In this document: one piece after another, positions 25,361-63,398 of the stretch
Position numbering within the stretch: the first letter of the stretch is position 1
How the letters are laid out: the number at the start of each line of letters is the position of its first letter
IMG/VR virus record: IMGVR_UViG_3300024259_002152
Span: 186,001 to 250,000 of that record
DNA length: 64,000 nucleotides
Strand: one strand, 5' to 3'
The notes under the pieces: model-generated
What the model saw: only the letters and a program-made list of their open reading frames with translations
Told to the model about the DNA's origin: nothing
Databases searched by the model: none
Made by a program: the position numbers and the translations under genes

Positions 25361-25623
25361 TGTATGGAATAGATTTTAATAATCAATTAGTTGATTACTT
25401 ACTAGATGATGATAGAAAAATTCCTAAAGCACATCTAGAAGGGGTATGTAAAATCGAGCAAAAAGATAAAACATGTCGATTTATTGCTTTGTCAAAGATA
25501 GGATATGTGTGCATGAAAAAAAGTCCTGCTAAGGTTAAGCTAGATGAAATGGCAAAAGATGGAAATATGGTGGCACAGTCCGACAACTGCGAGGGGTTGG
25601 GAGATATATATGGTAAAAGTTAA
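25360..25623 (+). CDS. Small Cys-containing hypothetical protein
   Basis: 87-aa ORF coupled to both neighbours; four Cys (VCK, TCRF, VCMK, DNCEG). Confidence 0.6.
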   Translation: MYGIDFNNQLVDYLLDDDRKIPKAHLEGVCKIEQKDKTCRFIALSKIGYVCMKKSPAKVKLDEMAKDGNMVAQSDNCEGLGDIYGKS

Positions 25624-26473
25624 TAATAAAAAGACTTTAAAAGTGAAAAAGAAGACGGTAAACTTAAAAAGTAAAGCAGTTAAGAAGAAAGCAGTTAAGA
25701 AGAAAGCAGTTAAGAAGAAAGCAGTTAAGAAGAAAGCAGTTAAGAAGAAAGCAGTTAAGAAGAAAGCAGTTAAGAAGAAAGCAGTTAAGAAGAAAGCAGT
25801 TAAGAAGAAAGTAGTTAAGAAGAAAGCAGTTAAGAAGAAAGCAGTTAAGAAGAAAGCAGTTAAGAAGAAAGCAGTTAAGAAGAAAGCATTTAAGAAGAAA
25901 GCAGTTAAGAAGAAAGTAGTTAAGAAGAAAGTAGTTAAGAAGAAAGTAGTTAAGAAGAAAGCAGTTAAGAAGAAAGCAGTTAAGAAGAAAGCAGTTAAGA
26001 AGAAAGCAGTTAAGAAGAAAGCAGTTAAGAAGAAAGCAGTTAAGAAGAAAGCAGTTAAGAAGAAAGTAGTTAAGAAGAAAGTAGTTAAGAAGAAAGTAGT
26101 TAAGAAGAAAGCAGTTAAGAGAGTTGCTAAACAAAAGGCTGTTAAAAAGAAAACAACTAGGAAAAAGGAAGTAAAAAAGAAAGCTAGAAAAAGAGTTTCT
26201 AGAAAGAAAATATTAATGGAAGATATTTATTCGATTATCAATAAGGCTCAATTTGGTAAAAGAAAAATAACATTTGTGACTGATCTGGCTGATGCTCCAA
26301 CCATAGAGAACAATATTAAAGATGTGGAGTTAAAATACGATAAAGTAGAGATGAAAACACAAGTAGTTTTTACTTTATACCCTAATGAGAAGAAATATGA
26401 TGAAGTAATGGATACTATACATTTTGATATTATGGACGATGAAATACCTGATATTGGACAAATTTTTGGATAA
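25610..26473 (+). CDS. Histone H1-like lysine-rich repeat protein with acidic C-terminal domain
   Basis: (A/V)VKKK pentapeptide x29 followed by a unique ~115-aa tail; ATG 25610 with GGAG SD. Confidence 0.75.
   Translation: MVKVNNKKTLKVKKKTVNLKSKAVKKKAVKKKAVKKKAVKKKAVKKKAVKKKAVKKKAVKKKAVKKKVVKKKAVKKKAVKKKAVKKKAVKKKAFKKKAVKKKVVKKKVVKKKVVKKKAVKKKAVKKKAVKKKAVKKKAVKKKAVKKKAVKKKVVKKKVVKKKVVKKKAVKRVAKQKAVKKKTTRKKEVKKKARKRVSRKKILMEDIYSIINKAQFGKRKITFVTDLADAPTIENNIKDVELKYDKVEMKTQVVFTLYPNEKKYDEVMDTIHFDIMDDEIPDIGQIFG
25676..26120 (+). repeat. Tandem 15-bp repeat G(C/T)AGTTAAGAAGAAA, 29 full units plus a partial unit
   Basis: Directly visible; variants are GCA/GTA and one GTT>TTT; no spacers. Confidence 0.98.
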
Positions 26474-50721: not shown

Positions 50722-52296
50722 ATGGCTTTTGACAGATATGTAGAGGGGTTTGATCAGTGCGAGCCTCCTGTATGTCCTGAAGATATAGTTATAACTATTA
50801 TCAGTGTTAGTTGCACAGAAGACAAGATGCTGCATGTAGAATGGTTGGTTACCGATAAATATAATAGAGATATTAATGGTAACTATTTAGCATGGTCTTG
50901 TGATAATCAGGATTTAGATACTACTGTTTTTCCTTCCATAGGTCCTACTTCTTATGTCTCTTATTTTGATATCTCTAGCTGTATGGGGATTATTTATTTT
51001 AAAATAAAGGTAAGAATTGGAACTACTTTTTTTGAGGGGGATTTAGAAGCGTTCGATACAGCACTATGTACGTCAAGCGATACAGCAGTTCCAGCATCAT
51101 GGTGCGGGGATTGTCCTGATGGAGTTTCTACACCTCCTCCATATCTACTGTATGTGATATCATCTACTGTTCCTTCATATCCTACATATTTTGACTATGC
51201 AGGGTTATGCTGGTATGTAGATGATAATGAGAATGAAATTTCTATAAGGGATTTGCCAGAAGGAGCTATTTTAACTGGAGCAAGTGAAATATATTCATCT
51301 TGTGAAGACTGTTGCTTACAATTAGATTGTCCTAGTCCTTGGGTAGAATTGCCAGCAGATATTCAAGCATTTGCGGGAGAAAAGGTGGGAGTCTTTTATT
51401 TTGAATATCAGACTTATGATGTTGCAGATCAGTTATTCGTTATTAGGAACTTTTTTGAGCCAGATGATTGTCTCACTGATGATGATGGAAATCTTTTACC
51501 TCCCCCTGATAATAAGATACTATTTGATACGGGTTGTGTGAGTACTAATTTACAGGATTGTCCATCTTTTTTCGTAGATGATCCCCTCTGTATGGATTTT
51601 GCTGCTGCTACTTATGGTTTTTGTGTTAGGGTTAGGGAGGGAGAGTTACCAATAGGTATTCTTAATGTTTGTAATTGTAATGATACCGAAGGCACTTATT
51701 GGAGAATATGTAGTATAGATCCTGATCGCAACATTTCTAATTGGGAAGGTGGAGATGAATGTTTATGCACGGATATGAGTTCTTCAAGCAGTTCTAGCTT
51801 AAGTAGTTCAAGTAGTTCAAGTTCAAGTTCAAGTTCAAGTAGTTCTAGTTCTAGTAGTTCTAGTTCTAGTTCTAGTAGCTCTAGTTCTAGTAGTTCTAGT
51901 TCTAGTTCTAGTTCTAGTTCTAGTTCTAGTAGTTCTAGTAGTTCTAGTAGTTCTAGTTCTAGCAGTTCTAGTTCTAGTAGTTCTAGTAGTTCTAGTAGTT
52001 CAAGTAGTTCAAGTAGTTCTAGTAGTTCTAGTAGTTCAAGTTCAAGTAGTTCTAGCAGTTCGAGTTTAAGTAGTTCGAGTAGCTCTCAAAACTTATGGTA
52101 TCATGCGGCTACAGGATGGACGGGGTCAGGATGCACAGGTATACCTGCTGGTTTGGTGCTCATCTGTCTTCCATCAGGTGTTGCGAATGGAAGATGTTAT
52201 AATGGAAGCTTCTCGGGTCTTCCGAGCGGATGCACAACCCTCGGACCAACAACTCCGTGCTCTGCAATAGATGGGACATATACTGGACCTTGTTAG
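50722..52296 (+). CDS. Cys-rich protein with poly-Ser tract and unique C-terminal tip (paralogue A1)
   Basis: MAFDRYVEGFDQCEPPVCP N-terminus; ~350-aa conserved Cys-rich region; Ser tract; ~70-aa Cys/Gly/Thr tip. Confidence 0.8.
   Translation: MAFDRYVEGFDQCEPPVCPEDIVITIISVSCTEDKMLHVEWLVTDKYNRDINGNYLAWSCDNQDLDTTVFPSIGPTSYVSYFDISSCMGIIYFKIKVRIGTTFFEGDLEAFDTALCTSSDTAVPASWCGDCPDGVSTPPPYLLYVISSTVPSYPTYFDYAGLCWYVDDNENEISIRDLPEGAILTGASEIYSSCEDCCLQLDCPSPWVELPADIQAFAGEKVGVFYFEYQTYDVADQLFVIRNFFEPDDCLTDDDGNLLPPPDNKILFDTGCVSTNLQDCPSFFVDDPLCMDFAAATYGFCVRVREGELPIGILNVCNCNDTEGTYWRICSIDPDRNISNWEGGDECLCTDMSSSSSSSLSSSSSSSSSSSSSSSSSSSSSSSSSSSSSSSSSSSSSSSSSSSSSSSSSSSSSSSSSSSSSSSSSSSSSSSSSSSSSSSSSSSSSSSSLSSSSSSQNLWYHAATGWTGSGCTGIPAGLVLICLPSGVANGRCYNGSFSGLPSGCTTLGPTTPCSAIDGTYTGPC
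51778..52086 (+). repeat. Poly-Ser coding tract (103 codons: 101 Ser, 2 Leu by hand count)
   Basis: Mosaic of AGT TCT, AGT AGT TCT, AGT TCA and AGT TCG units. Confidence 0.95.
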
Positions 52297-52327: not shown

Positions 52328-54010
52328 ATGTTAGATTGTCAAGTAATAACAGAAAACGATGATATCTTTATTTGTAAAAAGATGGGAGAAAGAACCCATT
52401 TTAAAGATTTTAAAATACACAAATCTCAATGTGAGCAGTGCGTGAAAGATGAAGAAATAGTGCTAAGACAGTTTGAAAATAATTTTTATTTTAGCTGTTT
52501 GATAAGTGTCGATCAAATAGATAAATTAGAGAATAAAGAAGAGATTATAGAAAATACTTTAGAATATTTTAGGCATTCTGAAAATGATCCAGATTTAGTA
52601 AATAAATTAAAATCTATGTTATTCTATTTTGTTATGAATCCTAGATTTAAATTTGATCCTATGGACAAATTGAGGTTGGAATATATTTTAAATAATATTG
52701 AAAATTTGAATTTATCGGAATCAATGGAAAGTTTTATTAACGATGATGAAAATTTATATAATTTTTATAAAAAGAACTTATTGGATTTAATGAGTAGTAA
52801 TATAGATGTTTTTAAAAATAGTATTAAACAACAATTAGAAATGGTGGTCGTTACAAAAGATTTTGCTATTCGATTTTTTGGGGAAAATAAAGACAAATTT
52901 GATGATGCTTTTTGTGCCGATTTTCATAAGTCTTTAAAAGAGTATGATAATAATATGGGGAGGATGAAGAAAGATCCTAATTTCGTTCCTGTTTTTAAAG
53001 TATCTTTAATAGATAAAATAAAGGGGGCAAAAGAAGCATTTAAAAGAATAGTAAAGAAATCTAAAGAAGAAGGAAAAGATGCTTTATGGATCAGCGAGAA
53101 AAAAATAATAGAAAGGCAAGTTTGTTGTACTACCTGCACGGATGGAGGAAGTTGTCCTTATTGTGGTTGCCAGATAAAGAAATCATGGTTTTTACCGCTA
53201 GGAAAATCAGAATTGTCAACTGAGGGCTGTCCCAATCTCAATACTTATCCCCATCTTAAAATCTTTCCCTCAAAAAATTATTGGGAAGTGTGTGAAGAAA
53301 AAACTTCTGTGATTATAGTCGCAAGAAATGAAGAAAATTTGAATAAAACTCTTGGAAGTCTTATTGCTAATGCAACAGGAGAAATAGAAATATTAGTTGG
53401 ATTAGATGGGTGCAGATATGATGTTATAAATAATGAAAAAGTTGCTACTTTACAATTTAATCAACATATAGGTAGGAGAAAAATATCTAATCAATTAGTT
53501 AAGTTGGCTACTGGGAAATACTTATTTGAAGTTGATGCTCATTGTGCTGTTTCTTATGGGTGGGATACTAGGTTAAAATGTGTGTGTGATGATAATATTA
53601 TTGTCGGATGTTCTGTTAATTCTATCGATGAAAAATTATGGGGATGTGATGAGGATATTAAATGGGTGGGAGGGAAAATAATAGAAGATGCAAAATGGAA
53701 ATGGGATAAAATTGATAATAATGTTGAGAAGATAGAAGAGGTAGAGAGTTTTAATGCTTGCGGATGGATGATAAGAAAAGATTATTTTGAAAAATTAGAT
53801 GGTCATGATGAAGATCTTGGAGAATGGGGATGGGAGAATGTTGAGTGGACATTAAAGAATAAATCTAATAGTGGTAGAATTATTATAAGAACAGATGTTA
53901 TAGTATCACATCTGTTTCGGAAACAGTATCCCTATGAAATAAAAGGATTAAAGTATAATGATGTAATACAAATATTAAAAAATAAAGACATTTACAAACA
54001 GGGTGTCTAA
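52328..54010 (+). CDS. Glycosyltransferase with polypeptide-GalNAc-transferase-like GT-A domain and Cys-cluster N-terminal region
   Basis: TSVIIVARNE, DAHC (DxH), WGWENVE, SHLFRK; upstream CCTTC...CPYCGC...GCP cluster. Confidence 0.78.
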   Translation: MLDCQVITENDDIFICKKMGERTHFKDFKIHKSQCEQCVKDEEIVLRQFENNFYFSCLISVDQIDKLENKEEIIENTLEYFRHSENDPDLVNKLKSMLFYFVMNPRFKFDPMDKLRLEYILNNIENLNLSESMESFINDDENLYNFYKKNLLDLMSSNIDVFKNSIKQQLEMVVVTKDFAIRFFGENKDKFDDAFCADFHKSLKEYDNNMGRMKKDPNFVPVFKVSLIDKIKGAKEAFKRIVKKSKEEGKDALWISEKKIIERQVCCTTCTDGGSCPYCGCQIKKSWFLPLGKSELSTEGCPNLNTYPHLKIFPSKNYWEVCEEKTSVIIVARNEENLNKTLGSLIANATGEIEILVGLDGCRYDVINNEKVATLQFNQHIGRRKISNQLVKLATGKYLFEVDAHCAVSYGWDTRLKCVCDDNIIVGCSVNSIDEKLWGCDEDIKWVGGKIIEDAKWKWDKIDNNVEKIEEVESFNACGWMIRKDYFEKLDGHDEDLGEWGWENVEWTLKNKSNSGRIIIRTDVIVSHLFRKQYPYEIKGLKYNDVIQILKNKDIYKQGV

Positions 54011-55839
54011 TGGCTTTTGACAGATATGTAGAGGGGTTTGATCAGTGCGAGCCTCCTGTATGTCCAACGGATATAACGATTGAGATTATTAATGTTGTGT
54101 GTGTATCTAATACTTTATATGTTACATGGAGTATTGTAGATAATACCAGCCAGAATTTACTAGATAATCTTAATTCCAATGATCTGCTATGGTCTTGTGA
54201 TAATCAAGATTTTGATAATATTGTTTCTCCTGGATACTCTTCTACCAATATTTATACTGTTTCTTTTGATGTTTCCACTTGTGATGGAGTCATTTATTTA
54301 AAAGTAAAAGCAAAAATAGTTACTACTTTTTTTGAAAGTGGTATAGAAACATTTGATACATCGGGATGTATTGATGTTAGTAATCTAGCAGTTCCTGCAA
54401 TTTGGTGTGGAGATTGTCCTGATATAGTTTCTACTCCTCCTCCATATTTATTATATGTGAGATCTTCTACTGTCCCTTCGTACCCTACATATTTTGATTA
54501 CGGAGGTTTATGCTGGTATGTAAATAGCAGTAATAATGAGATTATGATAGAAGATTTACCAGTAGGGGCCATTTTGACTGGAGCAAGTGAAATATATTCA
54601 TCTTGTGAAGACTGTTGCTTACAATTAGATTGTCCTAGTCCTTGGGTAGAATTACCATCAGACATTCAAGCATTTAATGGAGAAAAGGTAGGAGTCTTTT
54701 ATTTTGAATATAAAACTTATCTCGTTGCTGATAGAATATATGTAGTTAGAAATTTTGATCCAGATGATTGTGATGCAGAAGGACCTTGGACTCCTCCGTC
54801 TGAAAAAATATTATTTGATACAGGTTGTGTAAGTACTAGTGCAGGTCCTTGTCCATCTTTTTTTGTAAGTGATCATTTGTGTTTAAGTTATGGTTCTTCT
54901 ACTTATGGTTTTTGCGTTCGGGTTAGGGAGAGCGAGTTACCTATAGGTCTTGTTAATGATTGTAACTGTAATGATGAGACTACAGATACTAATTGGGAAA
55001 TATGTAGTGTAGATCCTGATGGTGTTATCTCTAATTGGGAAGGTGGGAACGATTGTTTGTGTGAAGATGCCATGTCTTCCAGTAGTTCAAGTTCAAGTAT
55101 AAGCTCAAGCAGTTCAAGCAGTTCAAGTAGTTCAAGCAGTTCAAGTAGTTCAAGTTTGAGTAGCTCGAGTAGTTCTAGCTCGAGTAGTTCTAGTTCAAGC
55201 AGTTCTAGTTCAAGTAGTTCTAGTTCAAGCAGTTCTAGTTCAAGTAGCTCTAGTTCAAGTAGCTCTAGTTCTAGTAGCTCTAGTTCAAGTAGTTCTAGTT
55301 CAAGTAGTTCGAGTTCGAGTAGTTCGAGTTCGAGTAGTTCGAGTTCGAGTAGTTCGAGTTCGAGTAGTTTTAGTAGTTCGAGTTCAAGTAGTTCGAGTTC
55401 AAGTAGTTCGAGTTCAAGTAGTTCGAGTAGCTTAAGTTCGAGTAGTTCGAGTTCAAGTAGTTCGAGTAGCTCAAGTTCGAGTAGCTCAAGTCACGCTGCT
55501 GAGGGTTGTCCCGCTACGTGTGGAGATTGTAGCGAAACTTATAATGTAGAAATAACAGGTTTTACTACTAGTCCTGAGCATAATATTTCTACCACCGTTA
55601 CACGAATTAGTGGATGTCAATGGATAACTGCTGGGATGGGTTTCGGAATGGCAGGAGCAGCTATTGAATGTGCTGGAGGAGTATGGGTAGTGCGTGAATA
55701 TTATTTATTCCCATATGTAATGGCTATAATTCCATCTGGTACAGAACCTCTCGCTTATACTAATGATTGCCCTACTACTAATTCTCCATATAACTTACTA
55801 AGTGCCATAGGAGATACTGGGATAGCAACGGTATCTTAA
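54010..55839 (+). CDS. Cys-rich protein with poly-Ser tract and unique C-terminal tip (paralogue A2)
   Basis: First 56 nt identical to A1; same Cys framework; different ~115-aa tip. Confidence 0.8.
   Translation: MAFDRYVEGFDQCEPPVCPTDITIEIINVVCVSNTLYVTWSIVDNTSQNLLDNLNSNDLLWSCDNQDFDNIVSPGYSSTNIYTVSFDVSTCDGVIYLKVKAKIVTTFFESGIETFDTSGCIDVSNLAVPAIWCGDCPDIVSTPPPYLLYVRSSTVPSYPTYFDYGGLCWYVNSSNNEIMIEDLPVGAILTGASEIYSSCEDCCLQLDCPSPWVELPSDIQAFNGEKVGVFYFEYKTYLVADRIYVVRNFDPDDCDAEGPWTPPSEKILFDTGCVSTSAGPCPSFFVSDHLCLSYGSSTYGFCVRVRESELPIGLVNDCNCNDETTDTNWEICSVDPDGVISNWEGGNDCLCEDAMSSSSSSSSISSSSSSSSSSSSSSSSSSLSSSSSSSSSSSSSSSSSSSSSSSSSSSSSSSSSSSSSSSSSSSSSSSSSSSSSSSSSSSSSSSSSSSSSSFSSSSSSSSSSSSSSSSSSSSLSSSSSSSSSSSSSSSSSSSHAAEGCPATCGDCSETYNVEITGFTTSPEHNISTTVTRISGCQWITAGMGFGMAGAAIECAGGVWVVREYYLFPYVMAIIPSGTEPLAYTNDCPTTNSPYNLLSAIGDTGIATVS
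55075..55491 (+). repeat. Poly-Ser coding tract (139 codons, 135 Ser by hand count)
   Basis: AGT/AGC-TCN mosaic with I, L, F, L interruptions. Confidence 0.95.
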
Positions 55840-57019: not shown

Positions 57020-57385
57020 ATGGAGTATCAAACAATGACGTTTAAAAATATATGTAAAAATTATTTTGATAGGAATAAAAAATATCTGCTATCAGATCAC
57101 ATTATTTACGAGATGAATGGGGCTGTGTTATGTAAGACAAGCAATGCTATTTTTGATTTTCATGAAATAGCAATAAAAAATATTATAGATTATTGCAAAG
57201 AGGCAGGATATGAAAAAATAGATAAAGTAGTTTTTGTTTCTTCTTATGATGTAGATATTGTTGAAGATGCTCCCAAATTACAACTAAAAATGCAAGCTGA
57301 TTCTAAAATAAGTATAATAAAAGAAAATGACAGATTTATAGCAATGGTTTGTATTGGAGAATGGGTGGAGATTAATGAAAAATAA
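57020..57385 (+). CDS. Hypothetical protein
   Basis: 121-aa ORF. Confidence 0.55.
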   Translation: MEYQTMTFKNICKNYFDRNKKYLLSDHIIYEMNGAVLCKTSNAIFDFHEIAIKNIIDYCKEAGYEKIDKVVFVSSYDVDIVEDAPKLQLKMQADSKISIIKENDRFIAMVCIGEWVEINEK

Positions 57386-59459
57386 TATAAAACAGAGTAT
57401 ATTCTTAGTGGGTTTTTTAATCATTTTTATTTCTTTTGTGCTGTCATGGAGGGTATTGACTTATAAAAAACTAGAAAATACTATTGTATTGAATACTCAA
57501 GAGAGGCTAGTGACTGTCGTTGAATCGGAATCAGTAATTATCAGTCAATTGATAAATAATTATTTTGTAGAGGACGATTGGTTGGCATTTATGAATGATT
57601 TCAATGGGAGAACGGGAAAAATAGGAAAAGATGGATATATGTGGATAATAGATGATAAGGGAATAGTAAAATATCATCCATATCAACAATACATCGGTAA
57701 AAGTGCAATTATTTTAAGAAGGAATATATTGGATGATGGAGGTTGTAAGAATTTTGAAGATATTATTGGTAGAATGAAAAGAGGAGAAAAAGGATATGGA
57801 GATTATACATCTATTTGGAGCAATAAAGATCAAAAAAAAGTGAAAAAAATAGTAGCATTTTGCCCTCTTGAAGTAAATAAAAACAAATGGTCGATTGCTG
57901 TTTCTATTGGTTATGTGGAGATCTCGTCTCCTATAGTCATAAATAAATATATGGATATTTTCGGCGTAATTGTTATATTTATTTTTACTTGTATTGTGGG
58001 TTATATTTTTTATAAGAAACAAAAGAAAATAGATGAAACAAGTATATTTGTTCAAACAGAACACGAGTTAAGGGAAAGTAAAGATTTTATAAGAAGAGTT
58101 ATTGATACTATTCCTCTTTTAGTTTTTGTAAAAGATTATGAGGGACATTACATATTAGCTAATCAAACATTGGCAGACATGCTAGGCGTAACAGTAGAAA
58201 AAATAGAGGGGAAAAAAGACATCGATTTCATGGGTAGCACTGAGGTTGAGGAAGCAAATCGGTATACAGATGCAGATAAAAAAGTCATTACAACTCAGGA
58301 AGAGATGCATATTTATGAAGAAAAATCTACGGACTCTAAGGGCAATATCGTATATTTTAACACAATAAAATATCCTTTAACTATTGGGGAGAAATCTGAT
58401 TACGTTCTAGGAGTATCTACTAATATCACAGAAAGAAAAATGGCAGAAGAGAAAATAGAGTCTTTGGCAAAATTTCCAGGAGAAAATAGCAATCCAGTGT
58501 TGAGAATAGATCATGATGGCAAACTTATTTATGCTAATAATGCTAGTGAAGCTTTATTAGAACTATGGGGTAGTAACGTGGGAGGATATGTGCCATCATC
58601 TTTTACTCATATAATAAAAGAGTGTTTGTTAGAGCATATAGTAAAAACTAAAGATATAAAAATTAATGGTAATATTTTGACATTGAGTTTCACTCCTATC
58701 CGTGATGATTATATTAATATTTATGGATCAGATATCACAGACATAAAAGCAGCAGAAGAAGAATTGAGAAAAGCAAACGAGGGGTTAGAGGAATTTGCTT
58801 ATATTACTTCTCATGATTTACAAGAACCATTAAGAACTGTTTTTGCATATTCTCAGTTATTGAAAAATTCTTGTTACGATAGATTGAGTGAAGAAGAACA
58901 AAAATTTCTTAACTATTTAATGAGCGGCAGCCAACGGATGAAGATACTTGTAAAAGAGTTGCTTGATTACTCAAGAGTTGGGAAAAGTCGAGATGCATCA
59001 GGAATTGAAAGAGTGAATATAGGGATGTTATTGGATGAGATCTTTGAAGACTCTCAAGTATATATTAAAGAAACAAATGCTATTATTACTGTTCAAAAAC
59101 ATATGCCTACAATTATTGGTTCTCGTTTGAGAATAAAACAGTTATTTCATAATCTAATTAGTAATGCATTGAAATTTAGAGGACAACAACAACCTATCAT
59201 AAAAATAGGTTATCGCGAGTTAGATGATGCAAATTATTGGGAGTTTTATGTTGAAGATAATGGGATAGGAATTGATCCTCAATTTCATGATCGTATTTTT
59301 GGTATTTTTAAAAGGTTGTATTCTAGAGAAGAATATCCTGGAACAGGTATAGGATTAGCTTTGTGTAAAAAGATTGTAGAAACTCATGCAGGTGATATAT
59401 GGGTAGAGTCTGAAGCGAATAAAGGGACTATAATCTATTTTACAATTGCTAAATCATAA
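57375..59459 (+). CDS. Membrane sensor histidine kinase (TM-Cache-TM-PAS-PAS-HisKA-HATPase)
   Basis: Two hydrophobic segments; GYMWIIDDKGIVKYHP; EEFAYITSHDLQEPLR; NLISNALKF; DNGIGID; GTGIGLALCKKIV. Confidence 0.92.
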   Translation: MKNNIKQSIFLVGFLIIFISFVLSWRVLTYKKLENTIVLNTQERLVTVVESESVIISQLINNYFVEDDWLAFMNDFNGRTGKIGKDGYMWIIDDKGIVKYHPYQQYIGKSAIILRRNILDDGGCKNFEDIIGRMKRGEKGYGDYTSIWSNKDQKKVKKIVAFCPLEVNKNKWSIAVSIGYVEISSPIVINKYMDIFGVIVIFIFTCIVGYIFYKKQKKIDETSIFVQTEHELRESKDFIRRVIDTIPLLVFVKDYEGHYILANQTLADMLGVTVEKIEGKKDIDFMGSTEVEEANRYTDADKKVITTQEEMHIYEEKSTDSKGNIVYFNTIKYPLTIGEKSDYVLGVSTNITERKMAEEKIESLAKFPGENSNPVLRIDHDGKLIYANNASEALLELWGSNVGGYVPSSFTHIIKECLLEHIVKTKDIKINGNILTLSFTPIRDDYINIYGSDITDIKAAEEELRKANEGLEEFAYITSHDLQEPLRTVFAYSQLLKNSCYDRLSEEEQKFLNYLMSGSQRMKILVKELLDYSRVGKSRDASGIERVNIGMLLDEIFEDSQVYIKETNAIITVQKHMPTIIGSRLRIKQLFHNLISNALKFRGQQQPIIKIGYRELDDANYWEFYVEDNGIGIDPQFHDRIFGIFKRLYSREEYPGTGIGLALCKKIVETHAGDIWVESEANKGTIIYFTIAKS

Positions 59460-59509: not shown

Positions 59510-59537
59510 TTGAAAAGTGAAAGTGTAGTGGTATAAT
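59510..59537 (+). promoter_or_regulatory. Sigma70-type promoter, motif copy 5
   Basis: TTGAAA-AGTGAAAGTGTAGTGG-TATAAT with an AT-rich upstream tract. Confidence 0.78.
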
Positions 59538-59572
59538 ATTTTTATTAAAGTATTTTGCTGTTGTTTGTCGAA

Positions 59573-59625
59573 TAGTAAGATAGTTAGTTTAGTTTAGTCT
59601 AGTTTAGTTTAGTAAGGAGTTACAA
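59573..59625 (+). repeat. (T)TTAG tandem-repeat leader running into the SD
   Basis: TAG TTAG TTTAG TTTAG TCTAG TTTAG TTTAG TAAGGAGTTACAA-ATG. Confidence 0.9.
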
Positions 59626-60243
59626 ATGAAAAAAAACAAGGCGGAATTAGTGTTTATTGTGGACCGTTCCGGCTCCATGATGTCAATTGCTTCTGATATG
59701 CAGGGAGCAATCAAGTCAGTTCTATCAGACCAAAAGAAAAACCTCAAAGGTGATATAAATGTGACCTTTGTACGTTTTGACTCTGAATACGAGGAAGTAT
59801 TCAGTGGTCGATCTATCAATGATGTTTCTGAAACGGATTTAGAAATTAATCCAAGAGGAATGACATCTTTGTTGGATGCAATGGGAAAAACTCTTAATAC
59901 TTTTGAAAGAAGATTTTCTGAAACAGATGAGAAGAATAGGCCTAAGAGGGTTTTATTCCTTATTATTACTGATGGACAAGAAAATAATAGCAAAGAGTAT
60001 TCGAGAGATAAAGTTTTTGGCATGATTAAAACTTTGGAAAGAGATCACGAATGGGGATTTACTTTTATTGGTGCTAACCAAGATGCTATTTCTGAAGGTA
60101 GTAGTATTGGTGTAGCAAGAGGAAAATCTCTTAATTATGCAGCTTCGACGAAGGGAGTTAGGTGTATGGCACGATCTGTTAGTAATTTTACAGCAGATTA
60201 TCTTGAGAGTGGTGATGCAAGTTACTCTGACGGTGATGAGTAA
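59626..60243 (+). CDS. von Willebrand factor A domain protein
   Basis: VDRSGSM (DxSxS MIDAS), PRGMTSLLDA, ITDGQENNSKEY, FTFIGANQDA. Confidence 0.9.
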   Translation: MKKNKAELVFIVDRSGSMMSIASDMQGAIKSVLSDQKKNLKGDINVTFVRFDSEYEEVFSGRSINDVSETDLEINPRGMTSLLDAMGKTLNTFERRFSETDEKNRPKRVLFLIITDGQENNSKEYSRDKVFGMIKTLERDHEWGFTFIGANQDAISEGSSIGVARGKSLNYAASTKGVRCMARSVSNFTADYLESGDASYSDGDE

Positions 60244-60245
60244 TT

Positions 60246-60283
60246 TTTAGTTTAGTTTAGTTTAGTTTAGTAAGGAGTTACAA
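60246..60283 (+). repeat. (TTTAG)5 leader plus identical TAAGGAGTTACAA SD block
   Basis: Shares 29 bp AGTTTAGTTTAGTAAGGAGTTACAAATGA with 59601-59629. Confidence 0.9.
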
Positions 60284-61153
60284 ATGAGTTATGATCAGAA
60301 AATCCAGTCCGCTCGTAAAGTCATTGACGAGCATAATGCAAATGCTGACAATCAAATCAATTTTGAGGAATTTACCAAAAAGCTTATTAATTTGGGAGGT
60401 TCTTCAGAAGAATCTCTAAAAGCAGTGAGTTGGGAAGATTTACAAGATTGTGGACTTCCTAAAATTATTGCTAGGAGATTAACATTTCTCTTCAGGCAAG
60501 ATTCCGACAATGAGGGAGGTAAATCTACTTATGTCTCTGAAAAGAAAGTTGGAACACTTTCTTATAGGGAGTTAGTAGAACGCTACAATCCAAAAGATGT
60601 TAAAAATCCTGTGGGCAAAAGATTAAAAGATCTTTCGGATAACAAGAAGTTTATTGTTTTCGATGATAATAGTAAAGTTATTATTGATGAAACAATAAGG
60701 TTGCTGGAAGATATTGTTAATGGGTTGCCTGAAGTAGAAACGGCTTTTGTGAATAAAAGACCTCTTCAAACCTATAGCGTTGGAGAGCGTCCTGATTTTT
60801 ATGCAGAAGAAAATCCGATTTATCCTGGGAGAGCATTACGTTCTAATGAAACGTGCGATCAAACAGGGCGTTCTTGGCAAGGGGTTTCTATAGAAATCCG
60901 TCAATTACTATATTTGGCTATTGACACAGATGAATTTGTCATTTCGTCTGTATCGGATGCTCACGATATCTTAGATAAAGTTTTATCAAAAGAGTGCTCT
61001 TTTGATAGGTTGAGAGGAAGATATCCTGAAGCATCTAAGGCTTTTGATGAGGCTAGTAAAATCGGGACACTTCCTCTTCTGAAAATCAAAATAGGGGATC
61101 ACGGAAGTGCAGAAAAAGGTAATAATCCTTTTGGTAGGAACACTATCTATTAA
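60284..61153 (+). CDS. Hypothetical protein, possible SAM/HhH-like helical motif
   Basis: SWEDLQDCGLPKIIARRL. Confidence 0.55.
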   Translation: MSYDQKIQSARKVIDEHNANADNQINFEEFTKKLINLGGSSEESLKAVSWEDLQDCGLPKIIARRLTFLFRQDSDNEGGKSTYVSEKKVGTLSYRELVERYNPKDVKNPVGKRLKDLSDNKKFIVFDDNSKVIIDETIRLLEDIVNGLPEVETAFVNKRPLQTYSVGERPDFYAEENPIYPGRALRSNETCDQTGRSWQGVSIEIRQLLYLAIDTDEFVISSVSDAHDILDKVLSKECSFDRLRGRYPEASKAFDEASKIGTLPLLKIKIGDHGSAEKGNNPFGRNTIY

Positions 61154-61164
61154 TATTAATTATG

Positions 61165-61195
61165 GGTGGGCAGCTTAGGTTGCCCACCTTTATTT
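61165..61195 (+). terminator. Intrinsic terminator-like hairpin with TTAG loop
   Basis: GGTGGGCAGC-[TTAG]-GTTGCCCACC-TTTATTT. Confidence 0.7.
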
Positions 61196-61207
61196 AGGAG
61201 ATATAAT

Positions 61208-62467
61208 ATGTCACAAGAAATGTCAGTAAAACAAGATTTAAAATGTATTTTTAATATGCCTGAGCAATTAAATAGCTCGTTTGATAGAGATCAAGAGGAA
61301 TTTCATAGTCTACCTCCTCATGCTCCCGTAGATGTTTATCCTGTAGATGAATATGAAAGTTGCCCCGCAAATTGGACACATGGTTCTGATGTGGCAAGTA
61401 GTTATTTTGTTGGAGTAAAAGAAAAACATGGCATGTGGTTAGATTTTAATGAGTGTTTTTATCATACTCATGATGTCGCGATTGTTATTTCAATTCAAGG
61501 TATTAATCCAATAACAGGACAAAAGATGGTAGCAGAAAAAGCTCTAAAGTTGGAGCAATATCATAAAAAATGTCCTATTCATAATGTTGATTATAAACAA
61601 GATAGATATTGTGAGAAGTGTGGGTTCAAATGGCCAGGACAAAATTATCTTGCCACCACAGGAACACCTGAAATGATGTTGTGGTTAGATGGTTTTAGAA
61701 CTCCAGAAGGAACAGTAAGGCAATACATTTTTACAGAAGATGAAATCAGGGGAGTGGCTTCTCAATTAATTGGTAAAGAAAGAGTATTTGCCATAGGTAT
61801 TGCTTATTATCTGAGTAAAAATAAAAAACCTTATACCCTACAACGTCCTGAAGAAAGAGTATTTACAGATAGTTATGCAGGACGTAAGTTTTTTAGTCCT
61901 ATGCATACCTCGGGGAATTGGAGTAAGGCTGCTCGCATCGGTGCGAGTGGATGTGATTCTAAGTCCTCGGGTTCTGATATAAAGATGGAGGCACTTGATC
62001 TATCTGATGAAATATCCATGCTTTTTGATGATTCTCCGAGTTATACAGAATCTTTAGGTGTAGATGATTCTGATATGATGATAGGAGCTTCAGATAATGA
62101 TGATTTATCGACCAACGGATTATTGAAGGGGATAATTACCCCTGATGCGGGAGATGATGGAGATAGAGCTACGGTTTGTACTGTGAACGGTTCGGCAATG
62201 CCTTCTTCCTCTACTCCTACTTCGAGTTCTGCTTTGAGACAAAGAAAGTCCATTACTCCTGTCAAGCAATTAGAGATAGGCGCAGGAGCATTAATACAAC
62301 AACGTGTTTATGATGATCCTAAGGTATTGACTTATTGGGAAGAAAAACCTGCTGGTATGATTTATATCAATTACTGCGATGAAGAAACAAAGAAACGAAT
62401 TTTAGATGCTGGTAGAAGAGCAGATGAAAAAGACGGATTTATGCAGGATATTAAAGTAGGTGGATGA
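61208..62467 (+). CDS. Conserved-looking hypothetical protein with a low-complexity middle
   Basis: GMWLDF...QGINPITG, WLDGFRTPEGTVRQY, IGAGALIQQRVYDD...W; AGGAG SD before ATG 61208. Confidence 0.6.
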   Translation: MSQEMSVKQDLKCIFNMPEQLNSSFDRDQEEFHSLPPHAPVDVYPVDEYESCPANWTHGSDVASSYFVGVKEKHGMWLDFNECFYHTHDVAIVISIQGINPITGQKMVAEKALKLEQYHKKCPIHNVDYKQDRYCEKCGFKWPGQNYLATTGTPEMMLWLDGFRTPEGTVRQYIFTEDEIRGVASQLIGKERVFAIGIAYYLSKNKKPYTLQRPEERVFTDSYAGRKFFSPMHTSGNWSKAARIGASGCDSKSSGSDIKMEALDLSDEISMLFDDSPSYTESLGVDDSDMMIGASDNDDLSTNGLLKGIITPDAGDDGDRATVCTVNGSAMPSSSTPTSSSALRQRKSITPVKQLEIGAGALIQQRVYDDPKVLTYWEEKPAGMIYINYCDEETKKRILDAGRRADEKDGFMQDIKVGG

Positions 62468-62494: not shown

Positions 62495-62537
62495 AAAGGG
62501 ACTATTTTTTACATAATGTGGGAATAGTCCCTTTTAT
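62495..62537. terminator. Bidirectional terminator between convergent genes
   Basis: AAAGGGACTATT (62495-62506) / AATAGTCCCTTT (62523-62534). Confidence 0.72.
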
Positions 62538-62947
62538 ATTGATACAGATTTTAAAGTTGCAAAAGTTAAAGCTCTTGAGAGATCTTTTGTTTGTATTTCA
62601 TCTTTGATAAGATAGTCTTTGATACCTAGTAGCCATGCTTTTCTACCAACGGAGTAATCTTCTAATCCTGTTAAGACAATAACTGGTGTGTTCTGGTTGT
62701 GTTTTTCTAGGTGCTCTAATGTAGTTTCTACTGTTTCTATCCCATCTGTTTCGGGCAATCCTAAGTCAAGGATGATAGCATCGAAAGTAGTCGAGGCCAT
62801 TTTTTTAAGTCCATCTTGTAGGCAATTTGATTCATCACAAACCATTACTCTTCCGTTCATTTGTTTAAGATGATTAATGATTAGATCTCTATCTTCTTTA
62901 CTGTCATCTATTATTAATATCTTCATTTTACTCAATGTCCTTTCCAT
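62534..62947 (-). CDS. Stand-alone response regulator receiver domain
   Basis: ILIIDDSKED, ILDLGLPETDG, PVIVLTG, DYLIK. Confidence 0.88.
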   Translation of the reverse strand: MERTLSKMKILIIDDSKEDRDLIINHLKQMNGRVMVCDESNCLQDGLKKMASTTFDAIILDLGLPETDGIETVETTLEHLEKHNQNTPVIVLTGLEDYSVGRKAWLLGIKDYLIKDEIQTKDLSRALTFATLKSVSI

Positions 62948-63398
62948 CTATAAAGCAAAAATTGTTATTATTGGGCAATTCATTTGATTTAAACCAATAC
63001 TTTCCTATAAGACCAACTTTATCATATAACTCTTGAATATCAAAAGTTTTAGTGATATATGAGTTGGCATGTAATTTGTATGTTTCTTCTATGTCAGGAG
63101 GAAAATCAGAAGTGGTGAATATAATAACTGGTATTACTTTATAGGCGTCATCAGTTTTAATAATTTTTAATATTTCTTTGCCATTAATATTTGGTATATT
63201 TATATCTAAAATAATGATATGGGGAGTTGGAGCAGACTCAAAGTTGCCTTTTTTATAGAGAAAATTTAAAGCATCGCTTCCATTACTAATATTTATCACA
63301 TCTAATGAAAGATTTGGGATCTTAGATAGAGCTTGTCTAAGTAGCTCAAAATCGGCTTCATTATCCTCTATAGATAATATTGTAAATCTCTTAGCCAT
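62928..63398 (-). CDS. Stand-alone Rcp1-type response regulator
   Basis: IEDNEAD, ILDINIPNINGKEIL, IPVIIFTTS...DIEETYKLHANSYITK. Confidence 0.92.
   Translation of the reverse strand: MAKRFTILSIEDNEADFELLRQALSKIPNLSLDVINISNGSDALNFLYKKGNFESAPTPHIIILDINIPNINGKEILKIIKTDDAYKVIPVIIFTTSDFPPDIEETYKLHANSYITKTFDIQELYDKVGLIGKYWFKSNELPNNNNFCFIDGKDIE

What the first reader, a model, noticed from the sequence alone, without database searches (positions are those of the whole stretch)
59573..60286. TRAP-like (UUUAG)n arrays overlapping the SD of two consecutive genes
Seen: both leaders are UAG triplets spaced mostly by two pyrimidines, running into an identical TAAGGAGTTACAAATGA. Counting NAG triplets gives 11 in 59573-59619 and 7 in 60248-60277. 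Established: Bacillus TRAP binds up to 11 (G/U)AG repeats with 2-nt spacers and blocks translation when they overlap the SD. Inference: co-ordinated translational control by a ring-shaped RNA-binding protein (host TRAP-like or phage-encoded). Alternatively, the 5-nt period places UAG stops in all three frames as an insulator, or forms an unstructured U-rich enhancer.
Basis: partly seen in the sequence, partly recalled or inferred. Interest (0 to 1): 0.65.

Follow-up and report, generated by a model that had tools for sequence, protein, structure and literature searches.

The report
Conserved UAG-repeat leaders in huge phages
Two neighbouring genes of a huge marine phage are each preceded by a run of UAG triplets spaced five bases apart that ends right at the ribosome-binding site. 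Dozens of related phages keep this feature, so it is very probably a translational control element, built like the binding site of the Bacillus TRAP protein, though no TRAP is present.

Summary
The window lies in a 351-kb phage record. Its only two dense UAG arrays are at 59573-59612 and 60248-60270, each followed by the same TAAGGAGTTACAAATGA.

They head a two-gene unit: sigma-70-type promoter, vWA gene, 289-aa gene of unknown function, terminator.

In 58 non-redundant leaders from relatives (48-76% protein identity), both genes keep such arrays.
- Period 5 accounts for 77% of steps between UAGs.
- Spacers vary (UU, AA, AG, AU) while UAG is kept.
- C is 0.4% of array bases.
- The last UAG lies 1-6 nt before the SD in 50 of 55 leaders.
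- Leaders change more slowly than synonymous sites.

Under strict TRAP grammar (2-3-nt spacers) this window has 6 and 5 triplets, not 11 and 7. The clade median is 6 and the maximum 11.

No TRAP, HutP, Hfq or S1 gene was found in four related phage records, one of them complete. The host is unknown.

Best reading (0.4): an operator for a still unidentified multimeric ssRNA-binding protein that controls translation of both cistrons. Main rival (0.3): a passive, C-free, unstructured leader.

The three-frame stop insulator and phase variation are disfavoured.

The parts
59510..59537 (+). Promoter: TTGAAA, 16-nt spacer, TG-extended TATAAT. It belongs to the phage-wide class TTGAAAAGTGAAAG-N8-9-TATAAT.
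   Evidence: Consensus scan gives 11 of 12 matches with a TG extension. The same extended motif occurs about 25 times on the record. It is conserved upstream of the first leader in relatives.
59545..59585 (+). 5' module of leader 1: invariant UUAAAG at or near the predicted transcript start, then a hairpin whose 3' arm carries an invariant CGA.
   Evidence: The MFE hairpin has z -2.6. UUAAAG and CGA are invariant in 27 relatives. In most of the 27 a hairpin is predicted at the same place with different stem sequences (mean z -2.2, 21 of 27 below -1.5). RNAalifold found no consensus structure. A second copy without an array lies at genome 7251.
59573..59612 (+). Array 1: 8 UAG plus 1 AAG. The regular core is 59585-59612, six UAG with UU or UC spacers.
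59614..59628 (+). SD AAGGAG (59614-59619), 6-nt spacer, and ATG (59626-59628) of the vWA gene.
59626..60243 (+). vWA-domain gene, 205 aa, with a DxSxS MIDAS motif. It matches phrog_7371.
   Evidence: Pfam VWA E 1.8e-8. phrog_7371 E 4e-54. It is absent from some relatives that still carry the array in front of the 289-aa gene.
60248..60270 (+). Array 2: five UAG with UU spacers. It starts 4 nt after the vWA stop codon (TAA, 60241-60243).
   Evidence: No significant structure is predicted (z -0.06).
60272..60286 (+). SD AAGGAG (60272-60277), spacer, and ATG (60284-60286) of the 289-aa gene. Identical to the first site.
60284..61153 (+). Gene for a 289-aa acidic protein of unknown function. It is conserved in huge phages and carries the motif CDQTGRSW.
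   Evidence: 112 homologues, many on contigs of 200-550 kb. No Pfam, PHROG, PADLOC or NCBIfam family matches. The model has pLDDT 84 and no clear fold match. Only residues 1-78 look weakly HhH/SAM-like (Z about 7). pI is 5.4.
61164..61196 (+). Terminator-like hairpin (11 pairs, 7 G-C) followed by a T-rich tail. It ends the two-gene unit.
61208..62467 (+). Next gene, 419 aa from ATG 61208, with its own SD and no array. Function unknown.

Best explanation
The two arrays are cis-acting RNA operators in the 5' leader and the intercistronic leader of one bicistronic mRNA (vWA gene, then the 289-aa gene).

Each array presents 5-8 UAG triplets at a pitch of about 5 nt on unstructured, C-free RNA that ends 1 nt before the SD. 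I propose that a multimeric or cooperatively binding single-strand RNA-binding protein reads the UAG triplets, as TRAP reads (G/U)AG-N2. Once bound, it covers the SD-proximal part of the ribosome's landing area. Both cistrons would then be switched together, most likely repressed.

The protein is not identified. It is not a recognisable TRAP, HutP, Hfq or S1 homologue of the phage. Candidates are a host factor or a phage product. One phage candidate is the 289-aa protein itself, acting in an autogenous loop like T4 gp32 or RegA.

Shown:
- the anatomy of the unit
- that the arrays are unique in the genome
- conservation of position and of the UAG triplet across the clade
- slower change than at synonymous sites

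Inferred:
- that the element acts as RNA
- that a protein binds it
- the sign of the effect
For: 1. Specificity. These are the only two such arrays in 351 kb. In the closest relative (298 kb) there are again only two, at the same two places, with 11 and 10 UAG.

2. Clade-wide conservation. All 58 non-redundant leaders of relatives with 48-76% protein identity carry UAG chains of 2-13 (median about 7) in front of the vWA gene and/or the 289-aa gene.

3. The triplet is kept while the spacer is free. Spacers are UU 178, AA 40, AG 10, AU 9, UG 6, UA 6, UC 5. Interior units without UAG are rare, about 3-10. The base before AG is U in 67% and G in 22%, against 38% and 26% in shuffles. A is depleted, 9% against 36%.

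4. Spacing. The AG-to-AG distance is 5 in 55% of steps, against 9% in shuffles. Contiguous NAG runs with 2-3-nt spacers have a median of 6 and a maximum of 11, against a mean of 1.75 and a maximum of 5 in shuffles.

5. Position. The last UAG lies 1-6 nt before the SD purine run in 50 of 55 leaders.

6. Constraint. In pairs with 76-83% identity at synonymous third positions, the leaders are 84-95% identical. The arrays are identical in contigs from independent seawater samples.

7. Not a general expression device. About 25 other promoters of the same class have leaders without arrays.

8. (TTTAG)n of 4 or more units is a scattered repeat in many genomes and viruses, but only 5 of 120 and 5 of 120 such arrays precede an SD and start codon. 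The placement here is therefore not a property of the repeat itself.

9. Array 2 has no promoter in front of it and lies inside the transcript. Both arrays are on the sense strand. This fits action at the RNA level.
Against: - No binder was found. PF02081, PF09021, PF17209 and PF00575 are absent from four related records, including a complete one.
- The cold-shock-domain gene (this record) and the CsrA gene (closest relative) are each present in only one record, so neither is a consistent partner.
- The 289-aa protein is acidic and has no recognisable RNA-binding fold beyond a weak HhH/SAM-like N-terminus.
- The period is not fixed. Periods of 4, 6 and 7 nt make up 23% of steps, and some relatives use only 6- or 7-nt units.
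- More distant relatives (33-44% identity) replace the arrays with hairpins plus GAAGAAG or GAGAGA tracts. The need might therefore be compositional rather than specific.
- Copying of repeat units inflates the apparent conservation of UAG.
- There are no expression data.
Confidence: 0.4

Rival explanations
1. Passive leader. The arrays are simply unstructured, C-free, start-codon-free RNA that keeps the strong SD accessible. They could act as a ribosome standby or landing track, an S1-type U-rich enhancer, or a Rho-poor untranslated stretch. No sequence-specific binder is involved. Repeat slippage is only the way such sequence is generated and maintained.
For: - C makes up 8 of about 1,940 array bases.
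- Array 2 has no structure beyond chance (z -0.06).
- The array units contain no AUG, GUG or UUG (read directly from the sequence).
- Unit length varies among relatives: 4, 5, 6 and 7 nt.
- Distant relatives carry other C-poor purine-rich tracts at the same place.
- Unit gain or loss is the fastest change. L057 and L058 are identical except for one 7-nt unit.
- (TTTAG)n arises readily in many genomes.
Against: - It does not explain why G is kept at every unit, nor why U or G and not A precedes AG, while the spacer is free.
- It does not explain why the pitch stays near 5.
- Only this operon, out of about 25 with the same promoter class, has the arrays.
Confidence: 0.3
2. A genuine TRAP (mtrB product) of a Bacillus-like host, activated by tryptophan, binds the arrays and blocks translation.
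For: [quoted passage not shown] Thirteen of 58 relatives reach 9-11 contiguous triplets, and the maximum is 11.
Against: - This window has only 6 and 5 triplets with permitted spacers.
- No TrpBP is present in the phages.
- The phage and its relatives come from seawater, marine or brackish sediment and saline-lake metagenomes. From my own knowledge, TRAP is confined mainly to Bacillales.
- No tie to tryptophan is visible in the gene content.
- Relatives built on 4-nt and 7-nt units would fit TRAP poorly.
Confidence: 0.05
3. RNase target. Each AG/UUU junction matches the loose RNase E preference (R-N, cut, W-U-U; my own knowledge). The arrays would then be processing or decay sites that uncouple the two cistrons or set mRNA half-life.
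For: The arrays are single-stranded, U-rich and intercistronic. RNase E processing of phage leaders is known for T4 gene 32 (my own knowledge).
Against: - Variant units such as UAG-AA and UAG-UC lose the U at +2 yet are common.
- One or two sites would be enough, so 5-13 phased copies are not explained.
- No RNA data are available to show ends.
Confidence: 0.08
4. DNA-level element or functionless microsatellite. The arrays would be an operator of direct repeats for a DNA-binding protein, or a neutral slippage product carried along, including a phase-variation tract.
For: It is a simple-sequence repeat. Copy number differs among relatives. The two leaders are identical in this phage and in its closest relative, which suggests recombination between them.
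Against: - Presence at both sites in all 58 leaders over deep divergence, and slower change than at synonymous sites, argue against neutrality.
- Array 2 has no promoter to operate on.
- The tract lies between the predicted transcript start and the SD, so unit changes alter neither reading frame nor promoter spacing.
- No length variants were seen in contigs from the sampled runs that span the arrays.
- The arrays are always on the sense strand.
Confidence: 0.07
5. Three-frame stop insulator. UAG every 5 nt stops ribosomes in all frames before the next start.
For: A period of 5 puts UAG in all three frames (read directly from the sequence).
Against: - Relatives L088 and L094 use a 6-nt unit, which places UAG in one frame only.
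- UAA units would serve equally well in a 33% G+C genome but are rare.
- The vWA gene already ends at TAA 4 nt before array 2.
- Three units would be enough.
Confidence: 0.03

Closest known systems
TRAP operators of Bacillus subtilis trpG, trpP and ycbK (translational control by the 11-subunit trp RNA-binding attenuation protein)
   Same: - (U/G)AG triplets with mostly 2-nt spacers whose sequence is free.
- Several contiguous copies.
- Placement against the ribosome-binding site.
- Very few sites per genome.
   Different: - No TrpBP homologue in the phages, and the host is unknown.
- UAG predominates rather than GAG.
- Only 5-6 properly spaced triplets in this window.
- The array stops just before the SD instead of spanning it.
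- Relatives tolerate 4-, 6- and 7-nt units.
- No link to tryptophan.
Autogenous translational operator of phage T4 gene 32 (structured 5' element followed by an unstructured A/U-rich tract with repeated UUAAA or UAAA reaching the RBS; my own knowledge)
   Same: - A phage mRNA leader with a 5' structured element, then an unstructured tract of short repeats that ends at the RBS.
- Operon-specific.
   Different: - The repeats here are regular and carry a conserved G.
- The downstream protein is not a recognisable ssDNA-binding protein.
- The intercistronic copy lacks the 5' hairpin in this phage.
- Binding by the gene's own product is untested.
HutP binding site of the Bacillus hut operon (UAG triplets separated by 4 nt; my own knowledge)
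   Same: UAG is the recognised triplet. Some relatives have UAG at a 7-nt pitch.
   Different: - A period of 7 accounts for only 13% of steps.
- No HutP homologue.
- No terminator follows the array that could be antiterminated.
A/U-rich translational enhancers and ribosome standby sites upstream of the SD
   Same: Unstructured, U-rich and immediately 5' of the SD.
   Different: Those elements have no conserved G, no fixed pitch and no tandem units. They are not restricted to one operon.

Membership tests
TRAP-regulated RNA operator | 9-11 NAG triplets, with G or U preferred at the first base | tested here: inconclusive
   With 2-3-nt spacers this window has 6 and 5. The clade median is 6, and 13 of 58 leaders have 9-11. 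The first base is U in 67%, G in 22% and A in 9%.
TRAP-regulated RNA operator | Spacers of 2-3 nt with non-conserved sequence | tested here: met
   The core spacers here are UU or UC. Across the clade, period 5 accounts for 77% of steps and period 6 for 5%, with many spacer sequences. Periods of 4 and 7 make up 18%.
TRAP-regulated RNA operator | At least one repeat overlaps the ribosome-binding site | tested here: inconclusive
   The last UAG ends 1 nt before AAGGAG. Overlap exists only if the SD's AAG and GAG are counted, which gives spacers of 1 and 0 nt.
TRAP-regulated RNA operator | A TRAP protein (Pfam PF02081) in the phage | tested here: not met
   No match at E up to 10 in this record or in three relatives, one of them complete. 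The control search found Bacillus subtilis.
TRAP-regulated RNA operator | A TRAP protein in the host, and dependence on tryptophan | not testable with these tools
   The host is unknown. Relatives of a virus record cannot be drawn.
HutP-type site | UAG triplets with 4-nt spacers, a HutP protein, and a downstream terminator | tested here: not met
   Period 7 accounts for 13% of steps. There is no PF09021 match. The SD and ATG follow the array directly.
Hfq distal-face site | Contiguous A-R-N triplets (Gram-negative bacteria) or AG repeats (Gram-positive bacteria), and an Hfq protein | tested here: not met
   The AGU triplets are separated by UU, so they are not contiguous. The phages have no PF17209 match. 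A host Hfq cannot be tested.
T4 gene 32-type autogenous operator | A structured 5' element followed by an unstructured repeat tract reaching the RBS | tested here: met
   Leader 1 has UUAAAG, a hairpin, then the array up to the SD. Leader 2 has the tract only in this phage. In one subclade leader 2 also has a hairpin.
T4 gene 32-type autogenous operator | The regulated gene's own product binds the tract | not testable with these tools
   The 289-aa protein has no known fold apart from a weak HhH/SAM-like N-terminus, and it is acidic. No RNA-protein prediction tool was available.
Phase-variable simple-sequence contingency locus | Repeat length changes switch the reading frame or promoter spacing, and lengths vary within populations | tested here: not met
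   The tract lies between the predicted transcript start and the SD. No indels were seen in contigs from the independent seawater runs that span the arrays, though depth was low.

The most novel reading that the evidence does not exclude
A clade of huge marine and sediment phages has evolved its own TRAP-like control system without a TRAP-fold gene. An unrecognised phage protein would assemble on UAG-N2 repeats next to the SD and titrate translation of a conserved two-gene module. That protein could be the conserved 289-aa product itself, acting on its own mRNA. This would be a convergent second invention of repeat-counting RNA recognition.
Probability: 0.2. Interest if true: 0.8.

Novelty: new variant of a known kind. 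Interest (0 to 1): 0.6.

Why it matters
Ring-shaped or cooperative proteins that read short triplets at a fixed pitch are known from very few systems, chiefly TRAP and HutP, and essentially from Bacillus.

Here the same RNA grammar is conserved in uncultured huge phages from seawater and sediments. It sits in front of a core gene of unknown function, and no known reader is present.

If a binder exists, it would be a new RNA-binding protein family and a compact, tunable translational switch in which repeat number acts as the dial.

If no binder exists, the clade shows how a simple-sequence repeat can be held for a long time as a functional leader.

Either way, the element marks the 289-aa gene as tightly controlled, and it gives a short RNA bait for finding that gene's regulator.

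Tried and rejected
- **Known readers.** Searches for TrpBP, HutP, Hfq and S1 in this record and three relatives found nothing. CsrA occurs only in the closest relative and a cold-shock-domain gene only in this record, so neither is a consistent partner.
- **Rfam.** No family falls on the arrays. There is only a sub-threshold L20_leader hit on the terminator.
- **Identity of the 289-aa protein.** Pfam, PHROGs, PADLOC, NCBIfam, a PDB profile search, Foldseek against PDB and BFVD, the wide VIA search and the protein atlas gave no assignment beyond a weak HhH/SAM-like N-terminus. The atlas was equally uninformative for the next gene.
- **Amber suppression or recoding.** There are 31 tRNA genes and none reads UAG. 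Genes are intact under table 11. No other genetic code was used.
- **Consensus structure of the 5' hairpin.** RNAalifold found no consensus structure. Only per-sequence folds support the hairpin.
- **Host.**
  - The virus record has no drawn relatives.
  - The GenBank relative LR756511 carries no host information.
  - The huge-phage paper gave no clue.
  - Homologues of the cold-shock gene carried no taxon names.
- **RNA evidence.** No RNA run holds the stretch. Only DNA contigs could be laid.
- **Literature.** Searches found no description of such leaders.
- **First attempt at relatives.** A single-protein search of viral contigs found none. The alignment-based searches succeeded.
Full report
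**What is there.** The window is bases 186,001-250,000 of a 350,866-bp IMG/VR virus record. The record has 33% G+C and is estimated 73% complete.

- Array 1 (59573-59612) holds eight UAG and one AAG. Its regular core is 59585-59612, six UAG with UU or UC spacers.
- Array 2 (60248-60270) holds five UAG with UU spacers.
- Each array is followed by the identical TAAGGAGTTACAAATGA. The SDs are at 59614-59619 and 60272-60277, and the start codons at 59626 and 60284.

They include the SD's own AAG and GAG and need spacers of 0-1 nt. With spacers of 2-3 nt the contiguous runs are 6 and 5.

The arrays are far from chance. There are 7 matches to TAGTTTAGTTTAG (up to 1 mismatch) against 0.23 expected. 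They are also the only such arrays on either strand of the whole record.

**Transcription unit.** A near-consensus promoter lies at 59510-59537: TTGAAA, 16 nt, TG-extended TATAAT.
- It belongs to a class, TTGAAAAGTGAAAG-N8-9-TATAAT, that occurs about 25 times on the record. None of the other leaders of that class has an array.
- The predicted leader starts near an invariant UUAAAG. It forms a hairpin at about 59548-59585 (z -2.6) and then runs through array 1 into the SD.
- The first gene (59626-60243) encodes a 205-aa vWA protein.
- Array 2 starts 4 nt after that gene's TAA stop codon.
- The second gene (60284-61153) encodes a 289-aa protein with no family.
- A strong hairpin with a T-rich tail follows at 61164-61196.
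- The next gene most likely starts at ATG 61208, with its own SD.

So this is a two-gene unit in which both cistrons are headed by an array.

**Relatives.** The 289-aa protein has 112 homologues, many on contigs of 200-550 kb. An alignment-based search fetched 36 viral and 80 metagenomic loci.

Every leader from relatives with 48-76% protein identity carries UAG-rich repeats directly in front of the SD of the 289-aa gene. Where a vWA gene is present, its leader carries them as well.

In several relatives the vWA gene is absent, and the 289-aa gene follows the promoter, the hairpin and the array directly. The intercistronic copy therefore looks like a duplicate of the leader that arose when the vWA gene came to lie in between.

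The closest relative is a 298-kb record. It again has exactly two arrays, at the same two places, with 11 and 10 UAG and blocks of AA spacers.

The two SD-to-ATG stretches are identical to each other in this phage and in that relative (26 of 26). In the other relatives they match less well, 11-23 of 26.

**Grammar across 58 non-redundant leaders.**
- UAG chains range from 2 to 13, with a median of about 7.
- The period is 5 in 257 of 335 steps, 7 in 43, 6 in 18 and 4 in 17.
- Spacers are mostly UU, then AA, AG(UU) and AU.
- C accounts for 8 of about 1,940 array bases.

An analysis that assumes only AG dinucleotides gives the same picture.
- The AG-to-AG distance is 5 in 55% of steps, against 9% in shuffles.
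- The base before AG is U in 67%, G in 22% and A in 9%, against 38%, 26% and 36% in shuffles.

Interior units that have lost UAG are rare, whereas about a third of spacers differ from UU. The last UAG lies 1-6 nt before the SD purine run in 50 of 55 leaders. In a small subclade a short hairpin sits between the array and the SD.

Relatives below about 44% identity lack the arrays. They have hairpins plus GAAGAAG or GAGAGA tracts at the same place.

**Constraint and dynamics.**
- In pairs whose synonymous third positions are 76-83% identical, the leaders are 84-95% identical.
- One pair that is identical everywhere else differs by one 7-nt unit, so unit gain or loss does happen.
- Contigs from independent seawater runs that span the arrays show them without indels, at low depth.
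- (TTTAG)n of 4 or more units turns up in at least 120 prokaryotic and 118 viral contigs. Only 5 of 120 arrays in each set are followed by an SD and start codon.

The repeat itself is therefore common. Its placement in this clade is not.

**The 5' module.** UUAAAG and a CGA about 20 nt further on are invariant in 27 first leaders. Most of the 27 fold on their own into a hairpin at the same place with different stem sequences (mean z -2.2; 21 of 27 below -1.5). RNAalifold finds no consensus on the MAFFT alignment, so covariation is suggested but not demonstrated. A second copy of this module, without an array, lies at genome 7251. The module and the arrays are therefore separable.

**Who reads it.** No TrpBP, HutP, Hfq or S1 match exists in this record or in three relatives, one of them 100% complete.
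- A CsrA gene is present only in the closest relative, and a cold-shock-domain gene only in this record.
- The 289-aa protein folds with confidence (pLDDT 84) but matches nothing clearly. Only residues 1-78 resemble HhH/SAM helical domains (Z about 7, E 0.28). The protein is acidic.
- None of the 31 tRNAs reads UAG.
- The host could not be determined.
- The samples are seawater, marine or brackish sediments and saline lakes.

**Interpretation.** The conserved triplet, free spacer, pitch near 5, position against the SD and restriction to one operon fit best with a platform for a multimeric or cooperative single-strand RNA-binding protein that controls initiation on both cistrons. I give this 0.4.

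This works like TRAP on trpG, trpP and ycbK, where 9-11 NAG repeats with non-conserved spacers are bound and one repeat on the RBS is enough (PMC4347634). It is not shown to be a TRAP system, because the defining protein is absent from the phages and the triplet count here is low.

The overall layout, a structured 5' element followed by a repeat tract reaching the RBS, also recalls the T4 gene 32 operator (my own knowledge). That makes an autogenous loop through the 289-aa product a testable guess.

The main rival (0.3) is a passive C-free, unstructured, start-free leader. It fits the variable unit length and the different tracts in distant relatives. It does not fit the conserved G or the operon specificity.

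An RNase target, a DNA-level operator or neutral microsatellite, a literal host TRAP, and a three-frame stop insulator each get less than 0.1. The last is contradicted by relatives with 6-nt units that put UAG in a single frame.

**Verdict.** The element is a new variant of a known kind of control element, and its reader is unidentified.

No alternative genetic code was used. The reads tool was given 1,401 bases.

Noticed in passing
window 25544-26473 (repeat at 25664-26120): A 309-aa protein with about 30 tandem AVKKK units, encoded by a 15-bp repeat that is 97% regular. It has a histone-H1-like lysine-rich tail and is probably a DNA-coating protein.
   Followed up: partly
window 51790-52066 and 55084-55476: Long serine-coding repeats (AGT/TCT type) inside two large ORFs (50722-52296 and 54010-55839). 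Apart from the two leaders, they are the only UAG-dense stretches on the record.
   Followed up: no
window 57354-59459 (+), 62534-62947 (-), 62928-63398 (-): Phage-borne two-component parts flank the operon: a Cache-PAS-HisKA-HATPase kinase upstream and two single-domain receiver proteins downstream on the other strand. The kinase is also directly upstream in relatives L007 and L011.
   Followed up: partly
whole record; for example window 27930, 40239 and 59510: A promoter class, TTGAAAAGTGAAAG-N8-9-TATAAT, occurs about 25 times, almost always on the + strand. It is conserved in relatives.
   Followed up: partly
genome 7240-7340 (outside the window): A second copy of the UUAAAG plus hairpin (CGAAUAG) 5' module sits behind a TATAAT box. 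It has no UAG array and is followed by another promoter of the same class and a 368-aa gene.
   Followed up: partly
genome 327905-338016 (outside the window): A cluster of 31 tRNA genes with no suppressor. One ARAGORN call at 329129-329204 has an odd two-base anticodon. A cold-shock-domain gene (65 aa) lies inside the cluster, at L374:1492-1689.
   Followed up: partly
L373 (closest relative, G001:257495-257659): The closest relative encodes a CsrA homologue (E 1e-23). None was found in this 73%-complete record.
   Followed up: no
L257 and L311:1213-1260: Unrelated phage contigs carry (TTTAG)6 directly against the SD (TTAGGAGCACAGCATG) of a small membrane-peptide ORF next to a terminase gene. 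This may be an independent use of the same leader device.
   Followed up: partly
L012-L042 and L096-L102 (distant relatives), 100 nt before the gene: Homologues with 33-44% identity have leaders with one or two hairpins of the type GCAGCAAUCGGCUGC, followed by GAAGAAGGAG, or by (GAA)n or (GA)n tracts. The gene therefore always has an elaborate leader, but of a different kind.
   Followed up: partly
window 61110-61201: A sub-threshold Rfam hit to L20_leader (28 bits against a gathering score of 58.7) falls on the terminator hairpin after the 289-aa gene. I take it as chance.
   Followed up: no
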